From the NCBI RefSeq assembly GCF_001194135.2, contig NC_068985.1, forward strand, positions 40,758,573 through 40,822,572: 64,000 nucleotides of DNA. Direction: 5' to 3'. This document shows, piece after piece, positions 5,189-36,670 of the stretch. The notes under the pieces are model-generated. The model saw only the letters and a list, made by a program, of their open reading frames with translations. It did not search any database and was not told the DNA's origin. The position numbers and the translations under genes are program-made. Each line of letters begins with the position of its first letter. Within the stretch, counting starts at the first letter, position 1. Origin of the DNA: Octopus bimaculoides (Eukaryota).

Positions 5189-6033
5189 NNNNNNNNNNNN
5201 NNNNNNNNNNNNNNNNNNNNNNNNNNNNNNNNNNNNNNNNNNNNNNNNNNNNNNNNNNNNNNNNNNNNNNNNNNNNNNNNNNNNNNNNNNNNNNNNNNNN
5301 NNNNNNNNNNNNNNNNNNNNNNNNNNNNNNNNNNNNNNNNNNNNNNNNNNNNNNNNNNNNNNNNNNNNNNNNNNNNNNNNNNNNNNNNNNNNNNNNNNNN
5401 NNNNNNNNNNNNNNNNNNNNNNNNNNNNNNNNNNNNNNNNNNNNNNNNNNNNNNNNNNNNNAATTTCTTGTGTCACCCGCACAAGAGCCAGTCCAGGGGC
5501 ACTGGCAACGATCTCACTTGAAAGATTTCATGTGTCGCCCGCACAAGAGCCAGTCCAGTGGCACTGGCAACGGTCTCACTCGAAAAATTTCTTGTGTCAC
5601 CCGCACAAGAGCCAGTCCAGGGGCACTGTATAATTTGATATACATTAAGAAAGATAAGTTTAACACATTAAATTAATGCGTAACATCTTCATTAATGCTG
5701 CCACTGAATTTAGGACGTTTATATTACTTATGAGGTTTTCTATTTTTTCAGTTAAAGTGTAGTTGGGTCTGAAAGGGGTGGTATAAAGCTAGCAATATGT
5801 GTTTTATAGTGAAAACAAAATTTCCTTTCAAATGGCATTTACTAGATGATTTCTGACCATTTTAAGTCGTAGTGGAAATACAACTTATGTTGCAAATAGG
5901 TATACGAATATTGTATAAATTTTGATTGAAAAATTTACTATATTTTGTACATATGGGTATATCAGCCTGCAGGCACAATAAAATGGGCTCGCGGGTGCAA
6001 TTGCACCCATGGGTGGGGGTTTCTCCACTCCTG
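5053..6033. mobile_element. Non-autonomous hAT element (MITE), contains an N gap
   Basis: TIRs CAGGGGTGGAGAAA (5053-5066) and TTTCTCCACTCCTG (6020-6033) match 13/14. Perfect 8-bp TSD GTCTAAAC at 5045-5052 and 6034-6041. Confidence 0.9.
5462..5628. repeat. 62-bp tandem repeat (~2.7 visible copies) inside the hAT element
   Basis: Units start at 5462, 5524 and 5586. The array runs into the N gap on the left. Confidence 0.9.
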
Positions 6034-10599: not shown

Positions 10600-11290
10600 G
10601 TGAGACTCACATGGAGTATTGCTTCCAAATCACCTCCACCAACTTTTACATACTCCCTCAACAATACCAATCTCAACATATCTATCAGTGAATGTGATCT
10701 GGGTATTATTGTCAACAGTAATCTGCATTGGATAAACCACATCTCGAAGATTGTCAAGAAGGCTGAGGGTGTCTTAGCATCACTCAGTAAGACCTTTGTC
10801 AGCTGCTCTCCAGCTATCTGTTTAAAGTTGTATATGACTATTGTATGTCCATACTTAGAGTTTGCATCACCAGTCTGGAATCCCTATCTTGCTCAGCATA
10901 TCAATCTCCTGGAAACTGTTCAGAAACATGCAACCAAAGGAATTCCAGCCATCAGGCATCTACCATACTCTGAACATCTTGCTTCCCTGGGCATGGACAC
11001 ATTAAAGCTGACGTCTGGCAACTGACTTGGTAGATAGATACCCACAAGATTATCCATCATCTTTCCAACAACAACCTTGGGTATCTTTTTGAATTCCATA
11101 CATCTAACACTCATAGACATGCTTACAAAATAAAAAAAACAATACAGCACCCATGACTTTTGGAAACATTTTTTCGTGCTCAGGATTGCTGAACCATGGA
11201 ATAAACTACATACATCAGTTGTTAGTAGTTGAAATTCTACATCCTTCAAAACTTCCATGCTTCCAGAAATTCGCCAACAGTACACCTGAT
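10600..11290 (+). mobile_element. 5'-truncated CR1/L2-like LINE, ORF2 C-terminus
   Basis: ECDLGIIVNSNLHWINHISKIVKKA, PYLEFASPVWNPY, LETVQKHATK and LPYSEHLASLG, then frameshifted HFF..RIAEPWNKL. Confidence 0.9.
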
Positions 11291-12117: not shown

Positions 12118-12946
12118 GTATATGTATAACTAGTGTGGTTAGACACTGCTTTTTTTCTGTGTAACACATCAAAGTGCACAGTATGCTCTCACAGACCATA
12201 GCATCATTCTGTATTGACTTGTGATGCAAACATTTTTACCGAAACTGACTGAAGGTGACAAAATCCAAATTCCTGGATTTTAGCATGAAGCCATAGTATG
12301 CAAGTAACGATTCACACATACACACACGCACGTGCACACACACACACACACAGGTATGCATATGAGAAGCCTTTTTTCAGCATCCATATACCAATGTTCC
12401 ATTCACTCACAAGGCTTTGATTGGCCCAGGGTTATAGAAGTCATGCACTCAAGGTGCTGTACAGTAGGATTGAACCCAAAACTACGTGGTTTGAAAGGAA
12501 ACTTTCTTTTCTTTAACCATAATGTGTGTGTTTGACTGCATGGCTGTGTGGTTAAGAAGCTTGCTTCCAACCATGTGGTCCCCACTGCATGACACCTTGG
12601 ATGGGTGTGTTCTATAGCCTTGGGCTGACCAAAGCTTTGTGAGTGGATTTGGTAGATGGAAACTGAAAGAAGTGTGTTGTATATATATTTATATGTGTCC
12701 CTTGTTTCCACATCGTGTGATGATGGTAAATAAGCATCACTGTCATACAAGTGATGCTGTTCATTTTTCTGTTCTCTGTCATGAAATATTACTTTGCTTG
12801 GAATAGGAAGGATATTTGTCACATTGAAAATTTGCTTCAATAAATTCCATCTGCTCTACCATTCAATCACAAATAAGACAACTTTAAATGAATAATAGGT
12901 TACACACACACATAATATACATACACACACACATATATACACATAG

Positions 12947-12983
<37 letters not shown>

Positions 12984-13023
12984 AATAAATGGAGTTAAAC
13001 GCAGCTGTTATTCAAATTCTTTT

Positions 13024-13112
13024 ACTTCCGACACATGTTTCGAAGATATCACTGGTATTATTCCAAAGGAATAAAATAATGTAAAACAATGTAATCCTCT
13101 CTTCAGGGAAAT
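13024..13112 (-). ncRNA. Minimal type-I hammerhead ribozyme (left arm, minus strand)
   Basis: Mirror image of 13459-13547. The stem III loop is ATGT instead of ACGT. Confidence 0.7.
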
Positions 13113-13458
13113 GAAGAAATGAAACTCGTCAATAATACATTTTAACAGAATATGATGGATATGTATAGTGATTAACTGAATGCTGTTAAGTTTGTTTTAA
13201 AATAACATTAGAAGATATAACGTCAAAGGTAGCCTATAGAATGAGGAGGGGTAAAGGAAGCATGGTTGGAAGCAAGCTTCTTAACCACACAGCCATGTAG
13301 TCAAACAGACTTTCCTTTACCCCTCCTCATTCTATAGGCTACCTTTGACGTTATATCCTCTAACATTATTTTAAAACAAATTTAACGGCATTCAGTTAAT
13401 CACTATACATATCCATCATATTCTGTTAAAATGTATTATTGACGAGTTTCATTTCTTC

Positions 13459-13547
13459 ATTTCCCTGAAGAGAGGATTACATTGTTTTACATTATTTTAT
13501 TCCTTTGGAATAATACCAGTGATATCTTCGAAACACGTGTCGGAAGT
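13459..13547 (+). ncRNA. Minimal type-I hammerhead ribozyme (Penelope/retrozyme type)
   Basis: atttcc (13459-13464), CTGAAGA (13465-13471), stem II gaggat/atcttc, GAAA (13530-13533), C-ACGT-G-T-C, then ggaagt (13542-13547). Predicted cleavage 3' of C13541. Confidence 0.8.
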
Positions 13548-13876
13548 AAAAGAATTTGAATAACACCTGCGTATAACTCCATTTATTTATTTATATATAT
13601 TATACAAAATATTTCACGTAAACCTGGAGTTTCTACCTTTAATAACAAGGAGCTGCACCCTTTTTTACTTGTGTGATTTTTTGCTACCCTGATAACTATT
13701 TNNNNNNNNNNNNNNNNNNNNNNNNNNNNNNNNNNNNNNNNNNNNNNNNNNNNNNNNNNNNNNNNNNNNNNNNNNNNNNNNNNNNNNNNNNNNNNNNNNN
13801 NNNNNNNNNNNNNNNNNNNNNNNNNNNNNNNNNNNNNNNNNNNNNNNNNNNNNNNNNNNNNNNNNNNNNNNNATAT

Positions 13877-16325: not shown

Positions 16326-16426
16326 CCCNNNNNNNNNNATGAGAGAGACAGAGACAGGCAGAAACAAGGAAAATGCCCCTTGTATTTGAATACTATGCAA
16401 ATATTCTTTTAAAAAAACTTTTCTTT

Positions 16427-16665
16427 TAGAAATAATACATTTCTAAATCTCTCAGAGAGATTTATGCAGTAGTGATGCGATAAAGTAGTTGTATGCTGTT
16501 AACTTAATGTGACAGCCCCAAGAAGTGGTGCTGCTTCCTACAGCTAAATAGCAGTAGTATTATTCCCTTCATGGGACTGTCACATTAAGTTGACAGCATA
16601 CAACTACTTTATCGCATCACTACTGCATAAATCTCTCTGAGAGATTTAGAAATGTATTATTTCTA
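16427..16665. repeat. Inverted repeat: arms 16427-16520 and 16572-16665, 51-bp spacer
   Basis: Hand alignment gives 92/94 matches. Confidence 0.95.
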
Positions 16666-16797: not shown

Positions 16798-17649
16798 GCC
16801 GACTTAGCTAAGTGGAGGTGCTTGTCTCCCCCTTGTAAACATAAGGACACAGGAAATGTGTCAAGGCCGACAGGAAGCGGTGCTGCTTCCTATGGCTAAA
16901 TAGCAGTAGTATTATTCCCTTCATGGGACTGTCACATTAAGTTGACAGCATACAACTACTTTTCTTATAATTTTTCCCAAATTCAATAGTTTTCCATACT
17001 TACAGTTGAAAAATGTCTCAATGACTGAAACCAGCACTGAAATGTTTTTTATAAAACAATTTTAGCATTTTCTACCTTGACTTTTTTATACACACACACA
17101 CACACACACACACGCGCACGCACACACACACACACACACACACACTGCTGTGTTTGGGACTAAATAACATGCAAACCCCGACAATTTTTATTATAATTTT
17201 ATAAAAACCAAAAAAATTTCTCCTTCCTCGAACTGTTGCAGTACTATTGAAATCTTTGTCTCTATAATGAATGTTAAAAGAAAACTGACCAATTGTGGTT
17301 AAAATGTTTATAATTACTGTATATTTAATTAAATGATTTGTTTCTTTGTATTTAATAAAATAAAATGATTCTACCAAAATAGAATGCAATTCAAAGTCTC
17401 AATTTATTTGCTCCTTTGTGTGGTGCATAAATATATGTGTGTGCCTGTACACACACGCAGTTACATACTTGAATGCTTATTTACATGTAGACGTTACTCC
17501 TTTACTCTGTCAGAAACAGATTATCAGATGCTCAGTTCATCATTCTCACTTTACTCTTCAAACATCCAAATGATGATTTTATTCCTAACATGTGATTCAG
17601 GTGAGAGTCAGGTGTAGAGGCATGTGCCATTACAGAACATTGCTGCATC

Positions 17650-22477: not shown

Positions 22478-23502
22478 TAATATTGAGATCTGGGGACTGT
22501 GGTGGCCAGATAAGATGTTCAACTTCACTAGAATGTTCCTTGTGCCATTCAGTAACAACTTTAGCTGTGTGAATTGGTGCATTATCATCCTGAAAGACTG
22601 CGATTCCCTCTGGAAACAGTTCCACAACCATAGGATGAATTTGATCAGATAAAATGCTTAAATAGTCCTGACTATTAATTGTGCCATGAAGGGAAACCAT
22701 TGGGCCGGCATATTTCCAAGATATAGCCCCACCAGATCATCACAGATCCTCCTCCATGTTTAACAGTTAGAAGAAGGCAGTCTGGGTCAAATGCTTCTTT
22801 TGGCTGTCTCCACTCATATACTTGGCCGGTGGTCAAAAATAAGGTAAAGGATGACTTGTCTGAGAAAATGACATTCTTCCACTGCTATAGGGACCAATTC
22901 TGTAGGTTTTTACTCCACTCTAAACACTTTGCAACGTTTGTTTTTGAAAGTTGTGGTTTTCTGATTGCAGTTGTCCCATGAAATCCGGCTTTGTGCAGCT
23001 CCCGGCAAACAGTTTTTATGGAAACTGGGTTCTCAAGGTGGTCATTAAGCTCTGCAGTAATTTTGGGAGCTGTACCTTTGTGATTCTTTCTAAAAATTCG
23101 CATAAGAGTCTGATGGTCCTTCTCTGAAAGTTTTGGTTTTCTTCTGGAGTTTTGGTTCGACGAGGAGGTTTTTCCCTCTTTCTCAAAGGCTGGCATTACT
23201 TTCAAGACAGTACTTCTTAATACACCAAACATTTCGGCTGTTTTCGTTATATTAGCATCTGCCATATGAGTACCAACAATTTGACCTCTTTCAAAGTCCG
23301 ATAGATCTGTCATTTTAATGAATTTTAATTACCTTTTTCTGATGATATCTGAAAAGAAACAGCGATTTTAGCAAAACATATTAAGCAACACTAATAATAA
23401 ATCAAAAAACATAAAACCAAACAAGCTTTTGATGGTTTTATAGATATTTCAAATTTATGATGCTATGATGCTGGGTGTTTCTATTATTTTGTCCAGCTCC
23501 TG
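22478..23502 (-). mobile_element. Tc1/mariner transposon, degenerate, 3' end truncated
   Basis: Transposase from ATG 23313 (MTDLSDFERGQIVG), VIFSDKS, VKHGGGSVMIW, FQDDNAPIH and WPPQSPDLNII, then cut off. One TIR TA|CAGGAGCTGGACAAAATAATAGAAACACCC ends at 23502. Confidence 0.93.
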
Positions 23503-31339: not shown

Positions 31340-32652
31340 AAGAGGAAATTAACGTGTAAAAGAGTTGGTAGTTCTTGACAGGAAAGAATTATAGGGAGAA
31401 GGTAGGCTAGCAGAGAAAGTAGCTTAGGTGTATTAATTATTTATTGATAATGTGGGTTGGGGTAGGCCAGCGTAAGATATGTAAATTTTTATTTATTTAT
31501 AATGTGGGTTGGATAGTTAGGTTAGGGAAGGTAATAAGCTGATAATTAGGTCTGCTAATGACATTTAAGCTAGGAGATAGTGGTGTTTATAGGAATGAGT
31601 GGGTTTAACGAAACTTAGAGAATACAAATCTGCTTTTATGCAGACAAAAAAAAAATGATTTTCATATTTCTTATTGAGTAGAAGTGATTTGGCCATTAAT
31701 ATTAGTAGTTTTTCTGTTTCACAGAACTGACAGCGCTTACTTTTAATGGTATAAGACAAAGTTTTTGCTAGGATACACCATTCTAAACTATAGTTGATTT
31801 TTTTTTTGTCTTTTAGTTCCCAAATGTAGCTACTACGTCCTGTAGAGTTTGCTTTACTTCTATTTCTAAATGTAGATTGGTGGGAATTGTATCTAAGAAT
31901 CATTTCATTTTTCGTGGCTACTATATAAGATTTCGTATGGTTATTGGTGAGTACGGTGCATTGGTATATTACGTTTTTTATTTTATACCTATTGGAGAAT
32001 TGACACTTATTTCTGTCTCTGCAGCCACATAAATTATTCGGTTTATCTGTGCTTATGTTATGTTGAGGGGCGTAATTATTTATCAGGTCCGTGTTGTTTG
32101 TGGGTGGGCTATCAGGGACGAGATTAATTCCATTTGCTTGTTGGCTGTTATGTTTTATGCAGGTATTTTTCCCAGTTTCGTAGAAAGCGTCTAGCTTATT
32201 ATTGTTGATCGAGGCTATGATGGTAGCTAGGTTACTAGTAAGGCCATGGCTAACTCTAATTTTATTCTTAATGATTCCTGAATATCTGTTATTCAAGTTC
32301 AAGTGCTTATCTATAAGTCTCAGTATGGAGTGAACTCTGTTAGATTTAAGCTGCATCGCATCGGGGATTATTAATCAGATCTTATCGCTATTTCGTTTAT
32401 TTTTAATATTATTAATTTTGGTGTAGAAGCTATCCTCAGTATTCGTGTAGAGTGTAAAGTTGCTGTTATAGTTATTATATTTCTTTCTATAGTTATTTTT
32501 ATTTTTATTATTGTTAGTGTGGGGGTTTTATTGGGGTTATTTCTGTACGATTTTCTTAAGTTATATGGCTTGGTGTTATCAATCTTCGCTGGGGTTATAT
32601 TAGTTCTTTGGGTTTCGTTGTTTTTATTCTTATTAATATTAAGATTTATTAC

Positions 32653-36336: not shown

Positions 36337-36349
36337 TAATCGTCAATAC

Positions 36350-36670
36350 AATTGCAGCATGGAAGGTGTTTATAAGCCATTTAAAAACACGCAAAAACCG
36401 TTAGATTCACTTCAACATTTAAATTCAAATTGTCAAAATATTTTCAGCACTTTGAGACCGCGACCTGTTCACTGACAAAATTCCATGCTGCATCTGAGAA
36501 AGAAACAGTTAGTTATTTTCTTTAATGCAGCACAGAATTTTGTCAGTGAACAGGTTGTGGTTTGAAAGCGACAAAAATATTTTGACAAGGTAAATTTAAA
36601 TGCTGAAGTGAATCTCATGGTTTGTGTGCATTTTTGAATGGCTTATATAAACACCTTCCACACTGCAATT
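36350..36670. mobile_element. MITE with long degenerate TIRs (~144 bp)
   Basis: Left aattgcagcatggaaggtgtttataagcca...ctgcat (36350-36493) pairs with right atgcagc...ataaacaccttccacactgcaatt (36525-36670). Confidence 0.85.

What the first reader, a model, noticed from the sequence alone, without database searches (positions are those of the whole stretch)
12529..13590. 279-bp palindrome whose spacer was copied from a SINE copy ~700 bp upstream
Seen: the arms are 271/279 identical with no indels. The 52-bp spacer is the reverse complement of 12529-12575 over 47 nt with one mismatch. The match includes non-SINE flank (tgtttgact) and a copy-specific variant (ttccaaccatg, where other copies read ttcccaaccacatgg-like). 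Inference: a template switch between the incoming element and local host DNA created A'-S'-A during integration or repair. Eight arm mismatches argue against a simple read fold-back artefact.
Basis: partly seen in the sequence, partly recalled or inferred. Interest (0 to 1): 0.72.

Follow-up and report, generated by a model that had tools for sequence, protein, structure and literature searches.

The report
Repeat-end palindrome with locally copied spacer
In an octopus draft genome, the first 283 bases of a dispersed repeat were copied backwards next to itself, and the join was filled with a 50-base copy of a SINE head 0.7 kb upstream; this is a clear example of a known class of copying error, not a new kind of element.

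Summary
The arms are 12977-13259 and 13312-13594 (283 nt, 275/283, no indels) around a 52-nt spacer. Spacer 13261-13310 is the reverse complement of 12526-12575 (48/50). That match includes non-SINE flank and variants seen in none of 13 other SINE heads.

New here: the arm is not unique DNA. An unrelated Octopus bimaculoides locus (L001) holds copies of it. The right arm together with its 107-nt "unique" flank up to the assembly gap is collinear with one of those copies (86%). So the right arm is the parental end of a dispersed repeat, which I call R. The left arm and spacer are the new DNA, laid down between a (CA)n(TA)n microsatellite and the end of R.

The outer junction lies in self-complementary (TA)n. 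The inner junctions show 1-7 nt of microhomology or stutter.

Best reading: one event with three template switches. About 0.4 for replication or repair synthesis, about 0.3 for a twin-priming-like event when R integrated. Assembly artefact is about 0.15 and cannot be excluded without reads. This is a known kind of rearrangement and of low to moderate interest.

The parts
12526..12575 (+). S, the source of the spacer: 12 nt of flank (gtgtgtttgact) plus the first ~38 nt of the local SINE copy
   Evidence: 48/50 reverse-complement match to 13261-13310 (I3). The flank and variants are absent from 13 other SINE heads.
12538..12860 (+). SINE-a: an old tRNA-derived octopus SINE copy that lacks ~11 nt present in other copies
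   Evidence: 72-88% identity to other copies in the window and in L001/L002. S continues directly into its body, so S is the original and S' is the copy.
12900..12976 (.). (CA)n(TA)n compound microsatellite; its (TA)n end forms the outer junction of the left arm
   Evidence: Sequence; repeat families D1/D2; junction listing.
12977..13259 (-). Left arm A: the new inverted copy of the first 283 nt of repeat R
   Evidence: 275/283 identical to the right arm. Its outer side runs into (CA)n rather than the repeat's normal continuation.
13260..13311 (-). Spacer: orphan G, then S' (13261-13307 secure, 13308-13310 ambiguous), then CT, which belongs to R
   Evidence: GGAAGCA occurs at both 13256 and 13268, and the source has TTCC at 12565.
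13310..13594 (+). Right arm A': the parental end of the R copy
   Evidence: Collinear with L001 copies. Window 13310-13532 matches L001 8417-8205 at 77%. Window 13504-13594 lies inside the 86% match to L001 9297-9494.
13595..13701 (+). D: the continuation of R beyond the palindrome, up to the contig end
   Evidence: Part of the 199-nt, 86% match of window 13504-13701 to L001 9297-9494. It has no other copy in the window.
13702..13872 (.). Assembly gap (171 N) cutting the R copy
   Evidence: In L001, the R homology reaches the point that corresponds to the window's contig end; a SINE head follows about 36 nt after it.

Best explanation
This is a real, one-off rearrangement made by serial template switching of a growing DNA 3' end during replication or break repair (the MMBIR/FoSTeS or polymerase-theta 'filler' class). 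Before the event, a copy of a dispersed repeat R (now 13310-13701 and beyond) lay directly next to a (CA)n(TA)n microsatellite. Step 1: a top-strand 3' end stopped in the (TA)n run. It paired through this self-complementary run with the (TA)n that R carries 283 nt inside, on the wrong strand. It then copied R back to its end, which made the left arm. Step 2: the end GGAA paired with TTCC at 12565-12568 in the SINE head upstream on the same strand. It added GCA, slipped, re-paired, and copied 12573 down to about 12529, which made the spacer. Step 3: it returned to the end of R through 1-2 nt (C/CT) and normal synthesis resumed. Shown: which pieces are copies of which, which arm is parental, and the junction sequences. 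Inferred: that all this was one event, that the steps occurred in this order, and which polymerase did it.
For: Both new pieces are reverse complements of sequence within 0.75 kb on the same strand. The right arm is parental because it continues into D exactly as the L001 copy does, whereas the left arm runs into (CA)n. The spacer is absent from the L001 copy, which reads AGGAATAAGCAG after the same end point; no SINE match falls in L001 8416-9296. So the spacer is not a fixed part of R in the one other copy examined. The divergences agree with one event: arms 8/283 and spacer 2/50, Fisher p = 0.65. Junctions show (TA)n at the outer end, a 4-nt match plus 3-nt stutter at J1, and 1-2 nt at J2. 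Differences are 6 transitions to 2 transversions, two at CpG sites, and by parsimony against L001 one maps to the left arm and seven to the right. Five of eight fall within 30 nt (p = 0.02), as reported near breakpoints of replicative rearrangements (my own knowledge). Two-piece and inverted templated insertions of this kind are described in the literature.
Against: No reads, no empty site and no second assembly could be reached. By parsimony against L001, 7 of 8 differences are derived in the right arm, not in the supposed new copy. An error-prone copying step does not predict that. The inner junctions have little microhomology. The palindrome centre coincides with the end of the R copy. That is automatic if the event happened at integration, but for a later event it needs the adjacent microsatellite to be the trigger.
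Confidence: 0.4

Rival explanations
1. The chemistry is the same, but the event happened while R was integrating as a retroposon, in a twin-priming-like way. One cDNA was primed at the 3' end of the R RNA. A second was primed from the target's (TA)n overhang on the internal UAUAUA of the RNA. Both ran to the same RNA 5' end, which gives the two arms. The top-strand end then snapped back onto the resected upstream SINE head for 50 nt before joining the other cDNA.
For: Both arms stop at the same R coordinate, within 2 nt. That is expected for run-off at one RNA end. The other R locus examined (L001) also has two R pieces in inverted order with inner ends facing. The pieces cover roughly R positions 1-220 or more (inverted) and 193 onward (direct), overlapping by 28 nt. 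That is the twin-priming pattern if the 880 nt between them is upstream R sequence. In L001, R is followed after ~40 nt by a full SINE, so R may travel as a 5' extension of a SINE. Twin and dual priming are described in PMC2837659.
Against: R is not shown to be a retroposon: no tail, no TSD and no coding sequence were found. Classical twin priming gives an internal deletion or a small overlap, not a 283-nt duplication. 5' inversions were seen almost only for human L1, not for the L2-clade or Nimb-2_DR LINEs tested in PMC4245944. Copying a template 0.4-0.74 kb away needs far more resection than a normal TPRT intermediate. No SINE body is visible right of the gap.
Confidence: 0.3
2. The palindrome is an assembly artefact. 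The inverted arm and spacer would have been produced by contig extension, gap closing or a repeat-induced misjoin in a short-read scaffolded draft.
For: The window is a gapped draft with 11 N runs. The palindrome ends 108 nt from a gap. A second young palindrome at 16427-16665 lies 89 nt from another gap. The chance of each is about 4%. All local duplicates of 90% identity or more in the window lie near gaps. The arms belong to a dispersed repeat and the spacer to a SINE, and both are typical misjoin substrates.
Against: There is no gap between the two copies, which is the usual mark of false duplications (PMC9516828). The spacer has its own two variants and two novel junctions, so reads must support it. 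The outer flanks of the two arms are entirely different. One of them (D) is verified as the native continuation by an independent locus, so the arms are not two haplotypes of one segment. The differences are transition-biased with CpG sites and are not confined to one arm (one left, seven right). The nearby gap is explained by R being a repeat followed by an AT-rich microsatellite.
Confidence: 0.15
3. The arms are the long terminal inverted repeats of a foldback or MITE-type DNA transposon. Its interior would have been lost and replaced by filler from flanking DNA during abortive gap repair.
For: The arms are repeat-family sequence in inverted orientation, both here and in L001. An older MITE-like palindrome exists at 36349-36669. 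Filler DNA at internal deletions of DNA transposons is known (my own knowledge).
Against: Family homology runs at least 107 nt beyond the outer end of the right arm, so that end is not an element terminus. The left pieces are cut at different positions in the two loci. No TSD is recognisable in the (TA)n-rich ends. The two arms are 97% alike whereas family copies differ by 14-23%, so these are not two old TIRs.
Confidence: 0.05

Closest known systems
Templated (filler) insertions and multi-step template switching at breaks or stalled forks: MMBIR/FoSTeS, polymerase-theta end joining, yeast foldback insertions (PMC11724301, PMC8421209)
   Same: The inserted DNA is copied from sequence within about 1 kb, in reverse orientation. 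There are two pieces from nearby loci in one insertion. The junctions show short microhomology, stutter and single orphan bases.
   Different: The pieces here are long (283 and 50 nt, against mostly 5-34 nt in the yeast study). The event is fixed in a germline genome. The inner junctions have little microhomology.
Short-range template switch mutations, four-point model (PMC7954356)
   Same: A reverse-complement copy of nearby sequence creates a perfect inverted repeat or hairpin within hundreds of bases.
   Different: That model describes one switched fragment per event. This structure needs two consecutive switched fragments from different sources.
Twin-priming or dual-priming 5' inversions of LINE-mobilised elements (PMC2837659, PMC4245944)
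   Same: Two pieces of one element lie head to head at its 5' side. The inverted piece starts at an internal site that matches the target overhang, here (TA)n.
   Different: There is a long duplication instead of a deletion or small overlap. There is a 50-nt filler from host DNA. The retroposon nature of R, its TSDs and its tail are not shown.
Fold-back inverted duplications with spacer (PMC3907307)
   Same: Inverted duplication around a short asymmetric spacer.
   Different: In those cases the spacer is the native single-copy loop contiguous with the arm, and the arms are kilobases to megabases long. Here the spacer is a copy from 0.7 kb away and the arms are 283 nt.

Membership tests
Templated-insertion / serial template-switch rearrangement (MMBIR/FoSTeS/TMEJ class) | Inserted sequence is a copy of nearby genomic sequence | tested here: met
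   The left arm is the reverse complement of the right arm (275/283). The spacer is the reverse complement of 12526-12575 (48/50).
Templated-insertion / serial template-switch rearrangement (MMBIR/FoSTeS/TMEJ class) | Microhomology at the switch points | tested here: inconclusive
   The outer junction lies in (TA)n shared by the flank and R. J1 has GGAA/TTCC plus a 3-nt stutter. J2 has 1-2 nt. These are short and could be chance.
Templated-insertion / serial template-switch rearrangement (MMBIR/FoSTeS/TMEJ class) | An ancestral (empty) state lacking the insertion exists | not testable with these tools
   No orthologous locus or reads could be reached.
Short-range template switch (four-point model) | One contiguous reverse-complement fragment between two switches | tested here: not met
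   Two fragments from separate sources (12526-12575 and 13312-13594) lie side by side.
Twin-priming 5' inversion | Two fragments of the same element in opposite orientation, 5' sides adjacent | tested here: met
   Both arms align to R copies of L001, with inner ends at the same R coordinate.
Twin-priming 5' inversion | Internal deletion or small overlap at the inversion point | tested here: not met
   The two pieces overlap by 283 nt and are separated by a 52-nt filler.
Twin-priming 5' inversion | Target-site duplications around the whole insert and a 3' tail | not testable with these tools
   The 3' side is lost in the gap at 13702-13872 and the left side is microsatellite.
Fold-back inverted duplication (Hermetz et al.) | Spacer is native sequence contiguous with the arm | tested here: not met
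   The spacer is a second copy of a segment 685 nt upstream (I3). In the L001 copy, R continues differently.
Foldback/MITE DNA transposon | Outer ends of the inverted repeats are the element termini, flanked by TSDs | tested here: not met
   Family homology continues at least 107 nt past the right arm's outer end. No TSD was seen.
False duplication in an assembly | Gap between the duplicated copies, and half or abnormal read depth | tested here: inconclusive
   There is no gap between the copies, but a gap lies 108 nt outside them. Depth could not be tested.
Octopus tRNA-derived SINE (source of the spacer) | Head homologous to other genomic copies, with the flank differing between copies | tested here: met
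   Alignment of heads from the window, L001 and L002. ARAGORN finds no intact tRNA.

The most novel reading that the evidence does not exclude
Head-to-head inverted copies may be a regular outcome when this repeat family integrates or replicates in octopus genomes. Both R loci seen here are inverted pairs, and a second young palindrome with a duplicated spacer lies 3 kb away. If so, the process would continually create long perfect hairpins that could be transcribed into hairpin RNAs, here with a loop antisense to a SINE head.
Probability: 0.1. Interest if true: 0.55.

Novelty: new member of a known kind. Interest (0 to 1): 0.3.

Why it matters
If the structure is real, each step of a multi-jump copying error can be read from the sequence. 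The parental and new pieces are identified, both templates lie within 0.75 kb, and a self-complementary (TA)n marks the point where synthesis went onto the wrong strand. It adds a germline invertebrate example to a class known mainly from human disease, cancer and yeast. It also shows how 0.6-kb perfect hairpins can arise next to repeats. In practice, such sites break short-read assemblies and can be mistaken for foldback transposons. Nothing here points to a new kind of element or to a function.

Tried and rejected
1. Looking for the orthologous locus or other individuals. Exact-protein look-ups for five ORFs around the site and a homology search with the 145-aa SINE ORF found nothing. The protein collections do not hold octopus non-coding ORFs.

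2. Scanning metagenome contigs for a conserved 25-mer of the arm gave 0 hits.

3. RNA-gene reading. There are only sub-threshold, generic hairpin matches (MIR1507 at 42 bits against a gathering score of 73) and no tRNA. I rejected these as chance.

4. The model in which the left arm is the original and the right arm the copy. I rejected it because D is the native continuation of the right arm in L001.

5. Two haplotypes of one segment. I rejected this because the outer flanks differ completely and one is independently verified.

6. Sequencing adapters in the spacer. The spacer is SINE head plus flank, not adapter sequence (adapter comparison is by eye and from my own knowledge).

7. A simple large inverted duplication followed by deletion. 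The order S...A-S'-A' does not fit this.

8. Looking for a SINE body right of the gap, to show that R is a SINE with a 5' extension. Only microsatellite matches were found.

9. Coding capacity of R. There is none.

10. Two further loci. L002 (O. sinensis) and L003 (not an octopus, no SINE) hold no R copy.

Full report
**1. What is there**

The window is a gapped, AT-rich draft (35.7% GC, 11 runs of N) from an octopod. A transposon-like ORF has its only database relative in Octopus bimaculoides, at 70% identity. The local SINE matches copies in O. bimaculoides and O. sinensis loci.

At the reported place there is a near-perfect inverted repeat. The arms are 12977-13259 and 13312-13594: 283 nt, 275/283, no indels. 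They are separated by 52 nt. As single-stranded DNA the region folds at -306 kcal/mol, against -50 for shuffles.

Spacer 13261-13310 is the reverse complement of 12526-12575 at 48/50 (I3; E = 4e-19). That upstream segment is the first ~38 nt of an old SINE copy (12538 to about 12860) plus 9-12 nt of its 5' flank.

The match is specific to this SINE copy:
- A 27-mer of the head occurs only at these two places in the window, allowing up to 3 mismatches.
- Other SINE copies match the spacer over only 20-39 nt at 85-95%.
- None of 13 other SINE heads from the window, L001 and L002 has 'tgtttgact' upstream or the 'CTTCCAACCATG' variant.

S runs on into the SINE body, so S is the original and the spacer is the copy.

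**2. The arm is part of a dispersed repeat**

The arm has no third copy in the window. To obtain more octopus DNA I fetched 20.6 kb around the O. bimaculoides protein found. This locus, L001, is unrelated to the window. It holds two pieces of the arm:
- Window 13039-13259 matches L001 8205-8415 (79%, plus strand).
- Window 12977-13067 matches L001 9388-9297 (90%, minus strand).

More telling, window 13504-13701 matches L001 9297-9494 as one block (86%, 199 nt). That stretch is the outer third of the right arm plus the entire 107-nt "unique" flank D, up to the contig end. The four-way alignment shows the right arm's outer flank agreeing with L001, whereas the left arm runs into (CA)n.

I draw four conclusions from this:
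- The arms belong to an interspersed repeat, which I call R. It is non-coding and unclassified.
- The right arm together with D is the parental R copy. The left arm is the new inverted copy.
- R homology to the L001 copy stops at window 13310, two bases beyond the palindrome. The palindrome centre therefore sits at the end of this R copy.
- The spacer is not part of R in the one other copy examined. After the same end point L001 reads AGGAATAAGCAG..., and no SINE match falls in L001 8416-9296.

This also explains the nearby gap: the contig ends inside a repeat and is followed by AT-rich microsatellite. R is not very abundant. I found none in 20.8 kb of O. sinensis, none in L003 (a non-octopus locus, no SINE), and none in the metagenome scan.

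**3. Anatomy of the junctions**

The new DNA is [left arm + G + S'], inserted between (CA)n(TA)n and the end of R.
- Outer junction: it lies in (TA)n. This run is self-complementary and is present both in the left flank and inside R at about position 285; L001 has it too.
- J1 (arm to spacer): GGAAGCA occurs at 13256 and again at 13268, and the source has TTCC at 12565. The arm end GGAA could therefore have primed on TTCC, added GCA, slipped, and restarted at 12573. This accounts for the otherwise orphan G.
- J2 (spacer to R): the secure copy of S ends at 13307. Positions 13308-13310 are ambiguous. 13310-13311 (CT) belong to R, leaving 1-2 nt of overlap.

**4. Age and mismatch pattern**

The arm differences are 6 transitions and 2 transversions, two of them at CpG sites. 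Five of the eight lie within 30 nt (p = 0.02). One pair is a CA/TG dinucleotide flip inside TAA-CA-TTA.

With L001 as outgroup, one difference is derived in the left arm and seven in the right. Four of the seven are clustered at 13358-13381.

Arm divergence (2.8%) and spacer divergence (4%) do not differ (Fisher p = 0.65), which is consistent with one event. Family copies differ from these arms by 14-23%. The two arms are therefore a recent local duplicate, not two old independent insertions.

**5. Mechanism**

A single template switch cannot give A-S'-A', because two reverse-complement pieces from different sources lie side by side. Both the left arm and the spacer can be read as the product of one 3' end growing left to right on the top strand:
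1. From the flank (TA)n, it copied R from its internal (TA)n back to R's end.
2. It then copied the SINE head 0.4-0.74 kb upstream on its own strand.
3. It then returned to the end of R.

I commit to serial template switching as the mechanism and split it by timing.

(a) During replication or break repair after R was already in place (MMBIR/FoSTeS or polymerase-theta-like), about 0.4.
- The distances, piece sizes and the two-piece inverted insert fit described cases.
- (CA)n(TA)n is a plausible stalling site (my own knowledge).

(b) During integration of R as a retroposon, twin-priming-like, about 0.3.
- It explains why both arms stop at the same R coordinate.
- It is echoed by L001, where two R pieces also face each other, overlapping by 28 nt in R coordinates.
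- Against it: R is not shown to be a retroposon; classical twin priming gives deletions or small overlaps; and 5' inversions were seen almost only for human L1 in the LINEs tested.

Shown: copy relationships, polarity and junction sequences. Inferred: a single event, the order of steps and the enzyme.

**6. Artefact?**

I give this about 0.15.

For it:
- The assembly is a gapped short-read draft.
- This palindrome and a second one at 16427-16665 lie 108 and 89 nt from gaps, at about 4% chance each.
- All high-identity local duplicates in the window lie near gaps.

Against it:
- There is no gap between the copies, unlike typical false duplications.
- The spacer has private variants and two novel junctions that reads must support.
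- The two arms have different outer flanks, and one is verified by an independent locus.
- The mismatches look like mutations and are not confined to one arm (one in the left, seven in the right).

Only reads can settle this.

**7. Other readings**

A foldback/MITE transposon with filler (about 0.05) is disfavoured because family homology runs past the arm's outer end and no TSD is seen. Classical fold-back duplication is not met, because the spacer is not the native loop. Sub-threshold Rfam hairpin matches are chance.

**8. Verdict**

This is a new instance of a known class of rearrangement, of low to moderate interest (0.3).

Noticed in passing
window 16427-16665 and 16871-16962: A second young palindrome: 99-nt arms at 97%, with a 41-nt spacer. 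Its spacer, the inner 44 nt of the right arm and 7 nt of the left arm recur as a direct 92-nt copy (96%) 352 nt downstream. It lies 89 nt from the gap at 16329-16338. It has no copy in L001 or L002.
   Followed up: partly
L001 8205-8415 (+) and 9297-9494 (-/+), O. bimaculoides CM046613.1: The other R locus also has two R pieces in inverted order with inner ends facing, 880 nt apart. They overlap by 28 nt around the quasi-palindrome TTGGTATTATTCCAA. This could be twin priming or a DNA inversion. A full SINE follows the R piece after ~40 nt.
   Followed up: partly
window 36349-36669: An older palindromic, MITE-like element: arms of about 150 nt at 80%, with a 5-nt spacer. It has no copies in L001-L003.
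   Followed up: no
window 5462-5628: A tandem repeat of about 62 nt (91-100% identical) starts 1 nt after the gap at 5189-5461. It may be a minisatellite that caused the gap, or a gap-edge artefact.
   Followed up: no
window 13206-13207 vs 13364-13365: One arm difference is a CA/TG dinucleotide flip inside TAA-CA-TTA, that is, an inverted loop of a mini-hairpin. It lies within a cluster of four right-arm-derived changes at 13358-13381.
   Followed up: partly
window 12371-12470: An inverted SINE fragment just upstream of the source SINE forms a 68-nt, 74% inverted repeat with 12581-12648 (I2).
   Followed up: no
window 22885-23313 (-), 31565-32356 (-), 10600-11025 (+): Transposon remnants. One is a Tc1-like transposase N-terminus (HTH_Tnp_Tc3_2, E = 3e-14), with relatives in O. 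sinensis. Another is a 263-aa ORF, 70% identical to an uncharacterised O. bimaculoides protein, with no Pfam hit. The third is a 141-aa ORF that looks like the C-terminal part of a LINE reverse transcriptase by eye, with no Pfam hit.
   Followed up: partly
window 12576 (SINE-a) vs other copies: The local SINE copy lacks about 11 nt (tccgggttcag-like) that other copies have. That region looks like the B-box region of the tRNA-like head, so this copy is probably transcriptionally dead.
   Followed up: no
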